Shown one piece after another: positions 3,022 through 64,000 of a stretch of DNA of 64,000 bases. The stretch comes from Heteronotia binoei (lineage: Eukaryota): contig NC_083237.1 in NCBI RefSeq assembly GCF_032191835.1, positions 7,440,001-7,504,000 on the forward strand, given 5' to 3'. Each line of letters opens with the position of its first letter. Position 1 is the first letter of the stretch. The position numbers and the translations under genes were made by a program. A model generated the notes under the pieces. It was not told the origin of the DNA. It made no database searches and saw only the letters and a program-made list of their open reading frames with translations.

Positions 3022-3158
3022 NNNNNNNNNNNNNNNNNNNNNNNNNNNNNNNNNNNNNNNNNNNNNNNNNNNNNNNNNNNNNNNNNNNNNNNNNNNNNNN
3101 NNNNNNNNNNNNNNNNNNNNNNNNNNNNNNNNNNNNNNNNNNNNNNNNNNNNNNNNNN
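3022..3158. other. Assembly gap (137 N) inside a hAT MITE (2950-3325)
   Basis: Run of N. Flanked by CAGGGGTGGCCAAAC / GTTTGGCCACCCCT ends. Confidence 0.99.
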
Positions 3159-3914: not shown

Positions 3915-4438
3915 TAGGGTTGCCAGAGACAATTCAAGAAATATCTGAGGACTTTGGGGGTGGAGCCAGGAGAAAGGTTGTGATAAGCATAATTGAACTC
4001 CAAAGGGAGTTTCGGCCCTTTCACTTAAAGGGACCGCACACCTTTGAAATGCCTTCCCTTCATTGGAAATAATGAAGGATAGGGGCACCTTCTTTGGGGG
4101 CTCATAGAATTGGACCCCCTGGTCCAATCATTTTGAAACTTGGAAGGTGTTTTGAGAAGAGGCATCGGATGCTATGCTGCAGATTTGGTGCCTCTACCTC
4201 AAAACACGCCCCCCCCCCCAAACCCTAGTTACTCACAGTTCAATTCTCCATTATATCCTATGGAAATCAGACTCCATAGGGAATAACAGAGTGCCCAGCA
4301 GACATTTCCTCTCCCCACCCCCGCTTTCTGATGACCCTGGGTTGTAAATAATGGAGGAGAACCAGAGTATTAGCCTGACATTTGTTCAGCCATCTTATAA
4401 AACAATCCCCTGCCCCCACCTGGGGATTGGCAACCCTA
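3915..4438 (+). mobile_element. hAT MITE (TAGGGTTGCCA TIR family)
   Basis: TIRs TAGGGTTGCC/GGCAACCCTA and a perfect 8-bp TSD CTTAGGCG. Other copies at ~6200-6475(-), 25401-25809, 44011-44540 and 44687-45150(-). Confidence 0.85.
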
Positions 4439-4559
4439 CTTAGGCGTTATTCCAGCCTTGTCGTTGCATAACTTTGCTGCCTGCTCTAAATGTCACTGGT
4501 AAAAATCACCCCCCCACACACCTGATGACATCCCTTTGCTTTCCCAACATGACATTCCC

Positions 4560-22569: not shown

Positions 22570-23129
22570 CCCACCTGGAGGCTGAAAACAATCCGAGAGA
22601 GGTCACTGTAATGGATAACACAACAAAAAATGCAAGCTAGTGACCATTTTACTAAGAAGTATATAGAAATCAATCCAAATATCCAAAACATGTATATTCC
22701 AGTCCCAAAGTAGCGTGGTGACAAGCCAATCGATTAAGTACTTGTTTCTTTCCAGTCTTCATCAGACCTGGGACCAATATTGATTCAATGATATAGATTT
22801 TTTACACAATTTTCAAAAAAGAGGGATGAAGAGCATCTCCAGCAGCAATTTCGCCTCCAGGAGCTGTAGCCAAGGTGAAATTGCTGCTGGAGACACTCTG
22901 TGTCCCTCTTTTTTGAAAATTGTGTAAAAAAATCTATATAATTGAATCAATATCGGTCCCAGGTCTGATGAAGACTGGAAAGAAACAAGTACTTAATCGA
23001 TTGGGTTGTCACCATGCTACTTCGGGACTTGAATATACACGTTTTGGACATTTGGACTGATTTCTATATACTTGTTAGTAAACTGGTCACTAGCTTGCTT
23101 TTTTTGTTGTGTTACCCACCTAGAGGCTG
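22570..23129. mobile_element. Penelope-like foldback insertion (~500-bp palindrome)
   Basis: Inverted arms span 22616-23114, with a 31-bp unpaired tail (22585-22615) and a 15-bp TSD CCCACCT(G/A)GAGGCTG (14/15). Hammerhead cores in both arms. Confidence 0.7.
22956..23028 (+). ncRNA. Candidate type I hammerhead ribozyme (mirror copy on - strand at 22702-22774)
   Basis: GUCCC-A-GGU CUGAUGA agacuggaaa GAAA-CAA...UUGUC|ACC...GGGAC. Stems I and III pair; stem II does not. Confidence 0.5.
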
Positions 23130-42663: not shown

Positions 42664-45229
42664 CTGGACACAATAATACCCAAAAATGAAGTGGCTGCAG
42701 AGCACCGGCCGTGTTGGAACTTGCCTCACCTCTTGACATTGCCTGTTTTATTTACAAACCTACAGTGTTTGAAGCTTCTGGCCTACAAAGTTTTTCACAT
42801 TCAAGTAGCAACAAAAACACAACCTTTTGAGAATCTTGGAATTTCCCCCCCCCCCCTAGCCAAGGCAAAACAGCAATTGAAACGAAGGTTTTAAAAGCAC
42901 TCAGGGCTAAAAACGAAACTCTTTTCCTGTCTCGTTCTTCAGCAACTCTGTCAGGCAGGTTGCTTATGTAACATCTCTCTTTTGCGAACAGTAAGCTGAA
43001 GCAAAGAGACACTAACTTGCCTAAATGCTATTAATTCCAGAGGGGGAAGCCATCAAGGTAGTTTCGCTGCCTCGAAAATAAACCGGCGTTTTGCAGCACT
43101 TTAAAGACAAAGGCAAAGCTGTTCCAGTATCAGCTTCTGTGGACTACAGCCAGCTTCTTCAGAGGCTAGGCATGGAACGTCATGCTTCATTGCATAGCGA
43201 GGATGCGCTCCTAGCATCTAAAAAACTAGGTGGTATTCTGAGAAAACCAGACGGAGTTCTTTAAGTCTTAAAGTTGAAGGGACTCCAGATTCCTGTTTGA
43301 CTCCCCGAAAACCTCTCCTTGTTGGGGAAGAATTTGAACCTAATGGTGTCTAGTTCAAGGGACAGCCCCAGCCTGGCAGGACAAAGGCTAGGCGATTTGG
43401 TGTCCTGAGACGATTATTGCCTCAGGACACCAAACCCTAACCCTTTCGCAGTTGCTCGAGAGAGAACTTTGGCCAGTGCAGCTTTTCTCTCCGTTTCTGT
43501 CCCGTGACAAGATTCGATAGCGGGGTGACCAAACCGCAGCTCGGGAGCCACATCTGGTTCTTTCACACATAGTGTGTGGCTCTCAAAGCCCCCACTACTC
43601 TGTCAGTCAGCTTGGAGAAGGCATTTGTCACTTCAAATAATTTCTCCAACCCAACCCAGCCAGCAGCTTGGAGGATGCATCTAAAGTTAAAGTCGCTTTC
43701 TTTCCACCTCTCTCTCCCCATCTCTATTCCTTCCTTCCTTCTCTCAAACATCTGACATTCCTTCCTTCCTTCTCTCAAACATCTGACATTCATTTCTTGA
43801 GGCTCTCAAACGTCTGACATTTATTCTATGTGAATCTTACATTAAGCAAGTTTGGCCACCTCTGTTCGATCGGGTTGCCACATCCAGGTAGGGAAACTTC
43901 TGGAGATTTGAGGATGGAGCCTGGGGAGGATAGGAACGTCAGTGAGGTACAATGCCATACACTCCACCCTCCCAGGCATCCTATTTCTTCAGAGGAACTG
44001 ATCTCTGAAGTAGGGTTGCCAAGTCCAATTTAAGAAATATCTGGGGACTTTGGGGGTGGGGCCAGGAGACTTTGGGGGTGAAGCCAGGAGACATTAGGGG
44101 TGGAGCCAAGATCAAGGCTGTGACAAGCATAATTGAACTCCAAAGGGAGTTCTGGCCATCACATTTAAAGGGACGGCACACCTTTTCAATGCCTTCCTTC
44201 CATAGGAAATAATGAAGGATAGGGGCACCTTCTTTGGGGGCTCATAGAATTGGACCCCCTTGTCCAATCGTTTTGAAACTTGGGGGATATTTTGGGGAGA
44301 GGCACTAGATGCTGTACTGAAAATTTGGTGCCTCTACCTCAAAAAACAGCCCCCCCAGAGCCCAGATACCCACGGATCAATTCTCCATGATTTTCTATGG
44401 GAATAAATCTCCATAGGGAACAACAGAGTTCCCAGCAGACATTTCCCTCCCCTCCCCCCGCTTTCTGACGACCCTGAAGCGGGGGGGAGGGCCTCCAAAC
44501 CGGGGGATCCCCTGCCCCCACCTGGGGATTGGCAACCCTATGAGCTGTCATTCCAGAGGATCCCCAGGGCTCACCTGGAGGCTGGCAGCTCTAGAAGATG
44601 CACCAGTGCAAGACGAAGGCAGCCCTTTCTATTGCATGCCCTCATTTCCAAGGACCCCCATGACTGATGGAAAAGCCAGAGCATTTTAGGATTGCCAATC
44701 CCCAGGTGGGGGCAGGGGATCCCAGTTTTAGAGGCCCTCTCCCCGCTTCAGGGTCATCAGTGGGGGGAGGGGAGGGAAATGTCTGCTGGGCACTCCATTA
44801 TTCCCTATGAAGATCGATTCCCATTGGGTATAATGGAGAATTGATCCTTGGGTATCTGGGGAGGCTGTTTTTTGAGGCAGAGGCACCAAATTTTCAGCAT
44901 AGCATCCAGTGCCTCTTCTCAAAATACCCTCCACGTTTCAAAAAGATTGGACTAGGGGGTCCAAGCCTATGAGTCTCAAAAGAAGGTGCCACTATCCATT
45001 TCCAATCGAAGGCATTTAAAAGGTGCGTGGCCCATTTAAATAGGATGGCCGGAACTCCCTTTGGAGTTTGATGATGCTTGTCACAACCTTGCTCCTGGCT
45101 CCACCCCCCAAAGTCCCCAGATATGTCTTGAATTGGACTTGGCAACCCTAGGGCATCTACGCCTCCAGGCCACACTCCATCAGTCCTAGAATGCACCGGG
45201 GACGCAGCTTGATATTGGAGGGGTAAAAG

Positions 45230-58489: not shown

Positions 58490-58986
58490 CCATTTCTTTG
58501 GCACCAGGGATCGGTTTTGTGGAAGACAATTTTTCCATGGACGGGGTGGGGGGGGTGATGGTTTTGGAATGATGCAATTGTGCACTTTATTTCTATTAGT
58601 TTGGTGTGGTGGTTAAGAGTGCAGACTCTTATCTGGAAGAACTGGATTTGATTCCCCACTCCTCCACTTGCAGCTGCTGGAATGGCCTTGGCTCAGTCAT
58701 AGCTCTCGCAGAGCTGTCCTTGAAAGGGCAGCTGCTGTAAGAGCTCTCTCAGCCCCACCTACCTACCTCAGAGGGTGTCTGTTGCGGGCGAGGAAGGTGA
58801 AGGAGATTGTGAGCCGCTCTGAGACTCTGAAATTAGAAGTGGAGGGCAGGATATAAACCCAGTGTCTTCATCTTACTATTATTATTACATTGTAATATAT
58901 AATGAAATAATTCTACAACTCACGGCCTGGTTGCTAACAGGCTACGGACTGGTACTGGTCCACGGCCCAGGGGTTGGGGACCCCTG
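58490..58986 (-). mobile_element. hAT-Charlie MITE resembling mammalian MER1, interrupted by a SINE
   Basis: CAGGGGTCCCCAACCCCTGGGCCGTGGACCAGTACC... and ...GGAAAATTGTCTTCCACAAAACCGATCCCTGGTGCC on the - strand. Confidence 0.6.
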
Positions 58987-60560: not shown

Positions 60561-60709
60561 AAAAGCCCCAGTGCCTTTCCTTGAAGATACTCCATCCTAC
60601 CATCATTGTGGTTTCCCTTTCCCCCATCTTCATCCTTTAGAGATGAATTGAATAAAACTGAACCCGGTATCCTAAAGATGGTTCTCTGTGTTTTTCTGCC
60701 CCTTTGCAG

Positions 60710-60844
60710 GCCATGTTGCAAGAGCTGAACTTTGGGGCATACCTGGGACTTCCAGCCTTCCTCCTGCCCTTGACGCAGGCAGACAACCCCAACTTGGCTC
60801 GTGTTCTGTGTAACCACATCAATACCGGGCACCATACTTCCATG
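60710..60844 (+). CDS. PRMT5: PRMT5 exon 4 (alternative identical donor at 60874/60875)
   Basis: ttgcag|[45 protein letters not shown]|gtatgt. 135 nt. Confidence 0.96.
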
Positions 60845-60883
60845 GTATGTTCAACCGGGCTCCATACATCCATGGTATGTTCA
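60824..60883 (+). repeat. 30-bp tandem duplication spanning the PRMT5 exon-4 donor
   Basis: ACCGGGCACCATACTTCCATGGTATGTTCA / ACCGGGCTCCATACATCCATGGTATGTTCA (28/30). Confidence 0.97.
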
Positions 60884-61510
60884 ACCATCTCTTCCTTTCT
60901 CCTCTATCCAGTCTCCATGGAGCCTCACACTCACATTTCCCTCGCCCTTGCTAAATGTCTCATCTTCAAGACACTCTCCTCACTCATCCCAAACTGTAAT
61001 GTATTGGCCACGTACCTGAAGTAGAGCAGAGGAGAGCCAAAGACATTGGCTGTAGAGTGGTAGCTCAAGTAAGTGAGCCAAGGAGAAGACCAGCACCCAA
61101 ACTGACCTAAGAAAGAATTCCTTAGGGACATCACAAGAGCCCTGCTGGATCAGACCAGGGTCTATCTAGTCCAGTGTCCTGCCTCACACAGTGGCCATAC
61201 AAACAAACAAACACACAGTGATAATGCTGGCTAACACAATGAGTAAAACGTTTTTTCAAGGATCATACGAATCTTTGGTCGCCTTATAAATAAGTACAAC
61301 CTTTCAGTATTGCAAAGAAAAGTCCATCCAGGAGTATTCCGATTTACTTGAAAGTTATCAGCCTCTTGTTACAGTTCAGTGTGTATATTGGGGAGCATGT
61401 GAGTCCTTAACCTCTTCTCTAAACAGATGCAAAAGCCTTCTGAATTCGGCTGGCAAAATGCTCTCTGCAACCTCTTAATTTTCTTCAAAATTACCATCCG
61501 TGGAAGAAAC

Positions 61511-61728
61511 CATGGCAATTATGAGTCAAGATGCACCTTTGAGACCAACAAAGTTCTCTTCAGAATGTAAGCTTTCATGGGCTCTAAGCGCACTTCATCA
61601 GACGAGGAATCAGGTACAGTCTGAATTAAACTTTGTTGGTCTTAAAGGTGCCCCTTGACTCCTACTTTGTTCCGCTGCTTCAGACCAACACGGCTGCCCG
61701 CTTGGATCTATCTGCATGGTAATTATGA
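61511..61728. mobile_element. Short Penelope/Neptune-like insertion, same family as 48244
   Basis: Same tail (GCTGCTTCAGACCAACACGGCTGCC...GGATCTA), 14-bp TSD CATGG(C/T)AATTATGA, and a degenerate hammerhead on the - strand near 61560-61600. Confidence 0.7.
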
Positions 61729-63683
61729 TGAGATACAACACAAAGCTGAATAGAAGTGAATAATTTTTTTACATTTAAATTAAGGACTTACCTCTCAGTG
61801 CCACTTAAGTGTTTATATTTTTATTAGGAGCGAGCCAGACCTGAACCTCTTCTCTAACCAGATGCAAAAACCTTCTGAATTTGGCTAGCAAAATGCTCTC
61901 TTAAAACCGCTTAAGTATTTCCTTTAGTCACCGTGGTCGGTAGCTGCTGATAGATCAGTCCATGAATCTGTATGCTCCTCTTTTAAAGCTGTCTAAATCC
62001 TTCCCAGTTCCAAGACTCTGAGCCACGTTCGAATCTCTCCCAAGTCCCGTCAAGGAGATCTTATTAGGAACTATGCCACAGTATACAGAGCCTTTATCTG
62101 TAGCTTCAAAATTTTGTAATTCCTTATGGGTGGTTGCTGGGTTGGGGGGGGACCCACCAAAATTTTGCTGGGCTAAAATCCCCTTCTTGGTCTCAGTGCG
62201 TTGCATCAAGAGAGGAAGTAGAATAAAAGGAATAAATTATATTGTGTTCACCAGAGCCAGTTTGGTGTAGTGGTTAAGTGTGCAGACTCTTACCTGGGAG
62301 AACTGGGTTTGATTCCCCACTCCTCCACTTGCAGCTGCTGGAATGGCCTTGGGTTAGCCATAGCTCTCGCAGAGTTGTCCTTGAAAGGGCAGCTGCTGTG
62401 AGAGCCCTCTCCAGCCCCACCCACCTCACAGGGTGTCTGTTGTGGGGGGGGGGAGAAGATGTTGGAGATTGTAAGCCGCTCTGAGTCTCTGATTCAGAGA
62501 GAAGGGTGGGGTATAAATCTGCAGTCTTCTTCTTCAGTGTTGTAAATTTTACGTAAATGTACCCCCGTGTTCTCTCCAAATGAACCAAACTGGGTTACAG
62601 CAGAAAAATAAATCTCTCTGCATAATGCAATAAACAAAATTCCAACAAGCAGCTTCTTGGTCTGATCCTGGATTTGTTGGCTAGCTGATCCTTGGCATAG
62701 GCTGTGGGCAATGGCGGCAGTCGTGTGAGCAAAAATTCTACTTTGTGAGCTACTGCATAAATTATTATGCTCTGGGGTCATCCTTCCTGAGCCAAGACAA
62801 AAATGTGTGAGCTGGAGGCTAAAAACCTGTGAGCTAGCTCATGCTAACTCAGTTTAAAGGGAACACTGGCTAAGGGTAAACTTGGCAACTCCAAGTTGAG
62901 AAATTCCTGGATATTTAGGGGGTGGAGCCTGGGGCAGACAGGATTTGGGGAGAGGAAGGACCTCAGCAGGATATAATTCCATAGAGTTCACCCTCTGAAG
63001 CTGCCGTGTTCTCCAGTGGAACTGATCTTTGTCTTCTCAAATCAGTTTTAATTCCAAGAGATATCCAGGCTCCACCTAGAGGTTGACAACTTTAGCTAAG
63101 AGCCAGGGCAGAAGAAAAATGAGCCTTTGTCGTGTGACTCATACCCAGTGCTGTATGCCTCTGGCCACATTTAAGCTTCGTCGCTTATCTGAACAGGAAG
63201 AGGGGGAAAAAATCCCAAATCCTCAGCAAGAGGATACAGCTGGTAAAGGTTTTCCTGCCACTCTTTCCCTCCTTTCATAGAATCCTAGAGTTGGAAGGAA
63301 CCTCCAGGGTCATCTGGTCCAACCCCCTGCACAATGCCTTCCCTCGTACATCCTCAGTGATCCCCTTCACATGCCCAGAAGATGGGGGGGTGGGTGGGAA
63401 ACCCCTCCAGGATCCCTGGCCAAACTGACCTGGAGAAAAATTGCTGACTGACCCCAAAGTGGCAGTCAGCGTTTCCCTGGGTGTGTAAGAAGGGCCACAA
63501 GATCTAAGCCCTGATGCAGCCCTTCCTGCCCTCCTTCTCATGATCTGCCTGTTCACAAAATCAGCATTGCTGTCAGATGGCCATCGAGCCTCTCCTAAAA
63601 ACCTCCAAAGAAGGAGAGCCCATGCCTCCCGAGGTGGTGGAGGATCCTCCTAAAGATCCTCTGGCTATGTCCATTCCTTATAA

Positions 63684-63825
63684 AGGGGGTGGCCAACGGT
63701 AGCTCTCCAGAGGTTTTTTTTGCCTACAACTCCCATCAGCCCCAGCCATTGGCCATGCTGGCTGGGGCTGATGGGAGTTGTAGGCCAAAAAAAAAAATCT
63801 GGAGAGCTACCGTCGGCCACCCCTG
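63684..63825. mobile_element. Palindromic hAT MITE, same family as 30291
   Basis: Perfect 8-bp TSD CCTTATAA. Confidence 0.85.
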
Positions 63826-63929
63826 CCTTATAACTCTCTCCAGCTCCATTTTGAACCCAAATTGGGGATCCGGCCACAGCATATCTCTAAAACTTTTTCC
63901 CTCCTACTCGCTTTCTTATTCCACCCCAG

Positions 63930-64000
63930 TTCTGGATGCGGGTTCCCCTACTGGCCCCAGAAGACTTGCGGGATGACTTGATTGAAAACGAGCCCATCCA
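63930..64000 (+). CDS. PRMT5: PRMT5 exon 5 (truncated by the window end)
   Basis: cccag|[23 protein letters not shown]. Confidence 0.96.

What the first reader, a model, noticed from the sequence alone, without database searches (positions are those of the whole stretch)
60824..60886. 30-bp duplication gives PRMT5 exon 4 a second, identical, in-frame splice donor
Seen: the duplicate copies the last 21 exonic and first 9 intronic bases. Both donors read CCATG|GTATGTTCAACC (60845 and 60875). Using the distal one adds [10 protein letters not shown] with no stop and no frameshift. The two mismatches between copies show it has persisted for some time. Known: this region is in the PRMT5 N-terminal TIM barrel, which mediates oligomerisation and partner binding (MEP50, pICln/RIOK1/COPR5), and PRMT5 itself controls snRNP biogenesis. 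Inference: a lineage-specific +10-aa isoform of an otherwise highly conserved enzyme, caught during exon extension.
Basis: partly seen in the sequence, partly recalled or inferred. Interest (0 to 1): 0.7.

Follow-up and report, generated by a model that had tools for sequence, protein, structure and literature searches.

The report
Duplicated splice donor in gecko PRMT5
A gecko's PRMT5 gene carries a real, lineage-specific 30-base duplication that gives one exon two identical splice donors; this architecture is already known from other genes, and I could not test whether the second donor ever makes a protein ten residues longer.

Summary
A 30-nt tandem duplication (60824-60853 and 60854-60883, 28/30 identical) copies the last 21 nt of PRMT5 exon 4 and the first 9 nt of intron 4. 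This gives two donors (60845 and 60875) that are identical from -6 to +12. Splicing from the second donor to the exon 5 acceptor (63930) would add [10 protein letters not shown] in frame.

New here:
- The duplication is absent from eight other squamates, including three geckos. The nearest is Gekko kuhli, 81% identical across the introns.
- Both mismatches are derived in the intron-side copy.
- The unit is flanked by an ACC microhomology, which points to replication slippage.

Use of the second donor could not be tested.

Published experiments predict opposite outcomes. Human F7 intron 7 has identical donors 37 nt apart and uses only the upstream one. Duplicated globin donors reach the switch point at about 30 nt.

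My estimate is about 50% silent or minor pseudo-donor, about 42% substantial +10-aa isoform, and about 5% artefact.

The scan noted similar donor-spanning repeats elsewhere in this genome. This is a new member of a known kind, of modest interest.

The parts
56161..56300 (+). PRMT5 exon 1, coding part from the ATG
   Evidence: tblastn of Gekko kuhli PRMT5 (P0109) and direct reading; ORF list
57553..57671 (+). PRMT5 exon 2
   Evidence: [18 protein letters not shown]...LLLSGR; AG acceptor, GTGAGA donor
58383..58468 (+). PRMT5 exon 3
   Evidence: [29 protein letters not shown]; donor GTGAGT at 58469
60710..60844 (+). PRMT5 exon 4 in its canonical form: 45 codons, matching human residues 106-150
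   Evidence: 45/45 identical to the Gekko kuhli, Eublepharis and Hemicordylus proteins
60824..60853 (+). Copy 1 of the 30-nt unit (last 21 exonic nt plus first 9 intronic nt). It holds the upstream, ancestral-position donor at 60844|60845.
   Evidence: its exonic 21 nt are identical to Gekko kuhli
60854..60883 (+). Copy 2 of the 30-nt unit. It holds the downstream duplicate donor at 60874|60875 and carries both derived substitutions (60861 T, 60868 A).
   Evidence: this is the 30-nt insertion relative to the eight other squamates read
60845..60874 (+). Potential in-frame exon extension ([10 protein letters not shown]) if the downstream donor is used
   Evidence: the next in-frame stop comes only at 61022
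60884..60886 (+). ACC that repeats the first three bases of the unit, a microhomology at the duplication boundary
   Evidence: (2.1 copies); Sphaerodactylus keeps ACC at the orthologous intron position
63928..64000 (+). Intron 4 acceptor AG (63928-63929) and the start of exon 5 (from 63930, phase 0); the window ends inside the exon

Best explanation
A replication-slippage tandem duplication of 30 bp, primed by an ACC...ACC microhomology, arose in this gekkonid's lineage after it split from the Gekko kuhli lineage. It straddles the exon 4 / intron 4 boundary of PRMT5. My reading is that the upstream donor (60845) still makes most or all of the mRNA, because it keeps the whole native exon in front of it. 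The downstream copy (60875) would then be a pseudo-donor that is silent, or that yields only a minor in-frame +10-aa by-product with no selected function. This is a near-neutral donor repeat of the kind described for human F7 intron 7. Shown: the duplication, its anatomy, its absence from relatives, and its polarity. Inferred: which donor is used.
For: (1) Anatomy and non-chance nature are established. (2) The duplication is absent from eight other squamates, including three geckos. (3) Copy 1 matches Gekko kuhli at 21/21 exonic positions, although the two species differ by about 19% across 5.7 kb of aligned locus. Copy 2 gained two changes, one turning a nearly invariant His codon into Leu (conservation). 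Copy 2 is therefore not held to the constraint on the native TGHH motif. (4) In human F7 intron 7, a 37-bp repeat spans the exon-intron boundary and gives five to nine identical donors. Only the most upstream is used, in three cell types, even though the downstream ones are functional when unmasked (PMC1557585). (5) No vertebrate PRMT5 model retrieved has an indel at this junction, except two annotated alternative isoforms. G154 is invariant and T153, H155 and H156 are nearly invariant. A sudden large share of +10 protein would therefore probably have been selected against. (6) Tandem duplications of this size are common in this window, 3 per 64 kb. My rough extrapolation is that on the order of 100 donors per genome would be spanned under neutrality. 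The scan's notes list further donor-spanning repeats in this genome.
Against: The two donors are identical from -6 to +12, so nothing intrinsic favours the upstream one. For duplicated globin donors, use of the intron-proximal (downstream) site rises steeply beyond about 30 nt separation and is about 100% at 45 nt or more (PMC3413131). 30 nt therefore sits at the switch point, where mixed use is expected. The duplication is in frame. That has a 1-in-3 chance if the donor is silent, but would be close to a requirement for survival if the donor is used. In Hemicordylus capensis, RefSeq isoform X1 uses a weaker donor (ATG|GTACGC) 39 nt into the same intron, so extension of this exon is at least annotated in another lizard. 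Computed accessibility is 5- to 1000-fold higher for the downstream donor, though very low for both. No RNA data were obtained.
Confidence: 0.5

Rival explanations
1. Both donors are used at appreciable levels, or the downstream one predominates. This gecko would then make a PRMT5 with ten extra residues in the helix-to-strand loop just before the FWMRVP strand: a real lineage-specific isoform or an exon boundary that is shifting.
For: The donor cores are identical from -6 to +12. Eperon-lab data show that neighbouring identical donors are both bound by U1, and that downstream use rises from about 30 nt separation (PMC3413131). The extension is in frame and free of stops. The downstream donor keeps the native pyrimidine-rich intron context, which is shared by the other geckos. 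Hemicordylus isoform X1 has a 13-aa insertion at the same junction. By TIM-barrel topology, the insertion point lies on the face opposite the MEP50-contacting loop (Xenopus residues 152-178) and the tetramer contact D125 (PMC3581573). This last point is an inference.
Against: The F7 precedent shows exclusive upstream use at 37-nt spacing (PMC1557585). The TGHH-SM|FW junction is strongly conserved across vertebrates. A His-to-Leu change in copy 2 shows no constraint on the duplicated motif. No protein model or transcript fragment with the insertion was found for any gecko, although this species' own models were not among those listed.
Confidence: 0.42
2. The duplication is not a fixed feature of the species. 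It is an assembly or polishing artefact, or a private allele of the sequenced animal.
For: No independent reads or second assembly of this species could be examined. No run held more than 15% of the sampled words of the stretch.
Against: The two copies differ at two positions. That is not what a collapse or polishing artefact produces, and it implies time since the event. The nearest assembly gap is 57 kb away, at 3022-3158. The boundaries show a clean 3-nt microhomology, typical of real slippage duplications.
Confidence: 0.05

Closest known systems
Human F7 intron 7 37-bp minisatellite (Borensztajn et al. 2006, PMC1557585)
   Same: The first repeat unit spans the exon-intron boundary, so the authentic donor is followed by sequence-identical donors a few tens of nt apart (37 nt there, 30 nt here). 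The pseudo-donors are intrinsically functional.
   Different: F7 has five to nine copies and is polymorphic, and only some of its pseudo-sites would keep the frame. Here there are exactly two copies, 93% alike, in frame, in a highly conserved essential enzyme. Upstream-only use is demonstrated for F7 and untested here.
Experimentally duplicated globin or consensus 5' splice sites (Eperon laboratory; Hodson et al. 2012, PMC3413131, citing Cunningham et al. 1991)
   Same: Two identical donors compete for one acceptor, and the outcome depends on their separation.
   Different: Those are engineered constructs with stronger sites (CAG|GUAAGU, AGG|GUGAGU). They splice almost wholly from the downstream site at 45 nt or more. 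The natural site here is ATG|GUAUGU at 30 nt, the reported threshold.
One-sided splice-site shifts in multiples of three and exon-boundary tandem duplications ('intron sliding'; Lehmann et al. 2010, PMC2891723)
   Same: An in-frame displacement of one intron border could start from a duplicated splice motif.
   Different: That work infers completed shifts between Drosophila species. Here the old border is intact and no shift is shown.
Hemicordylus capensis PRMT5 isoform X1 (XP_053121705.1, P0110)
   Same: An annotated in-frame extension of the same exon at the same junction (13 aa, VCPTGPAEHHASM). It uses a second donor 39 nt downstream that sits in a diverged copy of the exon end. That copy matches at 21/30, the only such match in the 20.7-kb locus, with 0 of 20,000 shuffles reaching it.
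   Different: It is a different and older event. The Hemicordylus element is orthologous to a degenerate intronic element in geckos that has lost its GT. Its donor is weaker (GTACGC), and the two species align only in and around exons.

Membership tests
PRMT5 gene, N-terminal TIM-barrel domain | The exon translates to the conserved PRMT5 segment | tested here: met
   E = 2.6e-20 to human PRMT5 chains, residues 106-151. 45/45 identity to gecko PRMT5 models. Database hits carry PF17285.
PRMT5 gene, N-terminal TIM-barrel domain | Neighbouring exons lie in order on the same strand | tested here: met
   Exons 1-5 were located with Gekko kuhli PRMT5.
Donor-spanning tandem repeat with pseudo-donors (F7 intron 7 type) | The repeat unit spans the exon-intron boundary | tested here: met
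   The unit is 21 exonic plus 9 intronic nt.
Donor-spanning tandem repeat with pseudo-donors (F7 intron 7 type) | The downstream copy carries a donor identical to the authentic one | tested here: met
   Identical from -6 to +12.
Donor-spanning tandem repeat with pseudo-donors (F7 intron 7 type) | Only the most upstream donor is used | not testable with these tools
No transcript-derived protein of this species was found.
Alternative 5' splice-site exon giving two protein isoforms | Two in-frame GT donors share one acceptor | tested here: met
Alternative 5' splice-site exon giving two protein isoforms | Both junctions are present in mRNA | not testable with these tools
   Same reason as above: no RNA evidence could be obtained.
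Alternative 5' splice-site exon giving two protein isoforms | The alternative segment is conserved in relatives | tested here: not met
   The 30 nt are absent from eight other squamates. Copy 2 carries a His-to-Leu change.

The most novel reading that the evidence does not exclude
The duplicate donor is used for a large share of transcripts. An essential, almost indel-free enzyme would then have acquired, within one gecko lineage, a ten-residue insertion six residues upstream of the loop that holds MEP50. The locus would also be a natural test of how the spliceosome chooses between identical donors exactly at the roughly 30-nt threshold. Together with the older copy still used in Hemicordylus, this would make PRMT5 exon 4 a recurrent site of donor duplication in squamates.
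Probability: 0.35. Interest if true: 0.5.

Novelty: new member of a known kind. Interest (0 to 1): 0.3.

Why it matters
If the second donor is silent, this is one more neutral donor repeat and mainly a caution for gene annotation: predictors may emit a spurious +10-aa PRMT5. If it is used, it becomes a naturally occurring, evolutionarily tolerated insertion in the PRMT5 TIM barrel. It would also be a clean in-vivo case for the unresolved question of whether identical neighbouring 5' splice sites are chosen by upstream scanning or by proximity to the acceptor. One RT-PCR would decide between the two.

Tried and rejected
1. RNA and DNA reads. The look-up of sequencing runs found no run holding more than 15% of the words.

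2. Search with the 106-aa genomic read-through ORF 60704-61021. It returned only mammal-like and fish fragments (P0001-P0009), with no reptile and no self hit. P0001-P0006 have the mammalian exon sequence and could come from human-like contigs, so I did not fetch or compare their contigs.

3. phmmer of the 45-aa exon against the representative library. It gave fragments and one mis-spliced monkey model (P0040), which served only as a full-length handle.

4. Listing the two squamate clusters twice gave the same 15 members each. The other 32 members, which may include this species, could not be seen.

5. AlphaFold2 of Hemicordylus isoform X1 with a 37-sequence alignment gave mean pLDDT 38. I did not use it beyond noting helix 141-153, then a loop, then strand 172-177. 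I ran no fold search on it.

6. I did not build or search a joined spliced +10 protein of this gecko.

7. RNA accessibility of the two donors differs, but both values are tiny. I give this little weight.

8. One literature search on 'identical donor' returned only transplant papers. PMC11718197 and PMC11912018 were read and found irrelevant.

9. The look-up of Pogona isoform X3 found no record.

Full report
**What is there.** Reading 60600-61100 shows the exon GCC ATG TTG CAA ... ACT TCC ATG followed by GTATGTTCA, and then a near-repeat of the preceding 30 bases.
- The repeat finder and TRF both report 60824-60853 and 60854-60883 as a head-to-tail pair, 28/30 identical. TRF extends the match by three further bases (ACC) to 60886.
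- The mismatches are 60831 A / 60861 T and 60838 T / 60868 A.
- The exon (60710-60844, 45 codons) matches human PRMT5 residues 106-150 with E = 2.6e-20 against solved structures.
- With Gekko kuhli PRMT5 as a guide, exons 1 to 3 lie at 56161-56300, 57553-57671 and 58383-58468, and exon 5 starts at 63930. 'Exon 4' is therefore correct.
- The two donors are identical from -6 to +12 (ATG|GTATGTTCAACC).
- Splicing from 60874 to 63930 would insert [10 protein letters not shown] between ...TGHHTSM and FWMRVP..., in frame and without a stop.
- Twenty Markov-simulated windows gave no such tandem pair, while the real window has three: here, at 43724 and at 47116.

**Where it came from.** Through a monkey PRMT5 model used only as a full-length handle, I reached the squamate PRMT5 clusters. 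I then fetched the genomic loci of eight species.
- The window aligns with the Gekko kuhli locus through the introns at about 81% identity over 5.7 kb. It aligns with Eublepharis and Sphaerodactylus at 73-77%, and with Hemicordylus only in and around exons. The window therefore comes from a gekkonid that is not very close to Gekko.
- None of the eight species has the 30-nt insertion (alignment A1).
- Gekko kuhli matches copy 1 at all 21 exonic positions, so both mismatches are derived in copy 2.
- The unit starts with ACC, and the base triplet after copy 2 is again ACC (also ACC in Sphaerodactylus). This is the signature of slippage at a 3-nt microhomology.
- Two changes in 30 nt, against about 0.19 pairwise divergence from G. 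kuhli, place the event well after that split but not yesterday. The Poisson error on two events is very wide.

**Is the second donor used?** This is the heart of the interpretation, and I could not test it.
- The run search found no strong holder of the stretch.
- Protein searches found no transcript-derived fragment or model from any gecko with the insertion. The listed cluster members did not include this species, so this is weak negative evidence.
The exons were treated one by one.

**What established knowledge predicts.** Two experimental systems speak directly to this question, and they disagree.
- In human F7, a 37-bp minisatellite whose first unit spans the exon 7 / intron 7 boundary gives five to nine identical donors. 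[quoted passage not shown] - Thirty nucleotides is exactly the threshold.
- Local context does not settle it. The upstream donor keeps the native exon and gains a GGG 13 nt downstream. The downstream donor keeps the native pyrimidine-rich intron start shared by other geckos.
- Both donors can be sequestered in a small CAUAC/GUAUG hairpin. The 60868 change weakens it by one pair in copy 2. I give this little weight.

**Evolutionary arguments.** These are also balanced.
- Against substantial use: across about 60 vertebrate PRMT5 models the SM|FW junction has no indel, and the preceding TGHH motif is invariant or nearly so. Copy 1 has not changed at all relative to G. kuhli, whereas copy 2 has turned one of those His codons into Leu.
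- For some use: the duplication is in frame. That has a one-in-three chance if the donor is silent, but is close to a condition of survival if it is used.
- Also for some use: Hemicordylus capensis RefSeq isoform X1 carries a 13-residue insertion at the very same junction. It uses a weaker donor (ATG|GTACGC) 39 nt into the intron.
- Location, by inference: in Xenopus numbering the insertion would fall between M145 and F146. Strand 146-151 leads into the 152-178 loop that contacts MEP50, and D125 of the same exon makes a tetramer salt bridge (PMC3581573). By TIM-barrel topology, a helix-to-strand loop lies on the face opposite those strand-to-helix loops, which would make an insertion there more tolerable.
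- The AlphaFold model I made of the Hemicordylus isoform was too poor to support this (pLDDT 38).

**Verdict.** Weighing these, I put about 0.50 on the upstream donor remaining dominant with the copy silent or minor. I put about 0.42 on a substantial +10 isoform, and about 0.05 on an artefact or private allele. The artefact reading is unlikely because the copies differ at two sites and the nearest gap is 57 kb away.

**How unusual is it?**
- Tandem duplications of 20-60 nt occur three times in this 64-kb window. My rough extrapolation is that, under neutrality, on the order of a hundred splice donors per genome would be spanned by one.
- The scan's own notes list a TRIM exon and three neighbouring genes in this same genome with repeats across their donors. 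I did not check those notes myself.
- The architecture is therefore a known kind. What is specific here is the gene, the exact two-copy in-frame form, and the 30-nt spacing.

**The Hemicordylus case.** It is a separate event, and I followed it only in part.
- Its second donor sits in a 30-mer that matches its own exon end plus donor at 21/30. This is the only such match in the 20.7-kb locus, and 0 of 20,000 shuffles reach it. It too is a copy of the exon end, at a 39-nt offset.
- That element is orthologous to a degenerate intronic element in Eublepharis and G. kuhli (16/30 and 15/30 to their exon ends, GT lost). The corresponding stretch in the window is about 60917-60946.
- An older duplication of the same boundary early in squamate history is possible, but it is not demonstrated.

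Noticed in passing
L001:4934-5002 (Hemicordylus capensis PRMT5): RefSeq isoform X1 (P0110) extends exon 4 by 13 aa (VCPTGPAEHHASM) through a second donor, ATG|GTACGC, 39 nt downstream. The 30-mer holding that donor matches the exon end plus donor at 21/30, the only such match in the locus, and 0 of 20,000 shuffles reach it.
   Followed up: partly
window 60917-60946; L002 about 4472-4501; L003 about 3930-3959: Geckos carry a degenerate intronic element orthologous to the Hemicordylus second copy (GCTGAGC..CAC...TCCAT..TAC in Eublepharis), with the GT lost. It may be the remnant of an older duplication of the same exon end. The similarity to the exon end in geckos (15-16/30) is not significant on its own.
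   Followed up: partly
P0088 (Malaclemys terrapin isoform X1) and P0011: Turtle-like models show a 24-aa insertion at the same junction. It starts like a donor (VSAG...) and ends like an acceptor (...CFPPQ), which looks like retention of a very short in-frame intron 4 of about 72 nt. The intron is 3085 nt in this window.
   Followed up: no
window 55598-55670 (- strand): A tRNA-Arg(ACG) gene lies about 490 nt upstream of the PRMT5 start codon. A 79-nt stretch around it is 100% identical to the Hemicordylus locus, and the region is also conserved upstream of Sphaerodactylus PRMT5.
   Followed up: partly
window 43724-43785 and 47116-47233: There are two further two-copy tandem duplications (periods 31 and 59 nt, 93% identity or more), so duplications of this size class are frequent in this genome.
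   Followed up: no
window 58598-58855 and 62253-62533: SINE-like repeats in introns 3 and 4 match several places in the PRMT5 introns of Gekko kuhli and Sphaerodactylus at 73-82%. They may explain the small word shares of the sequencing runs.
   Followed up: no
window 63700-63810: A near-perfect palindrome of about 110 nt lies just upstream of the exon 5 acceptor, with arms ending in T-runs and A-runs. It matches both strands of several places in the Hemicordylus locus. It may be related to the intronic palindrome that another note reports at 22570-23129.
   Followed up: no
window 60833-60850 and 60863-60880: Each donor can pair with the CAUAC that lies 6-11 nt upstream of it (GUAUG/CAUAC hairpin). 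The 60868 T-to-A change removes one pair in copy 2.
   Followed up: partly
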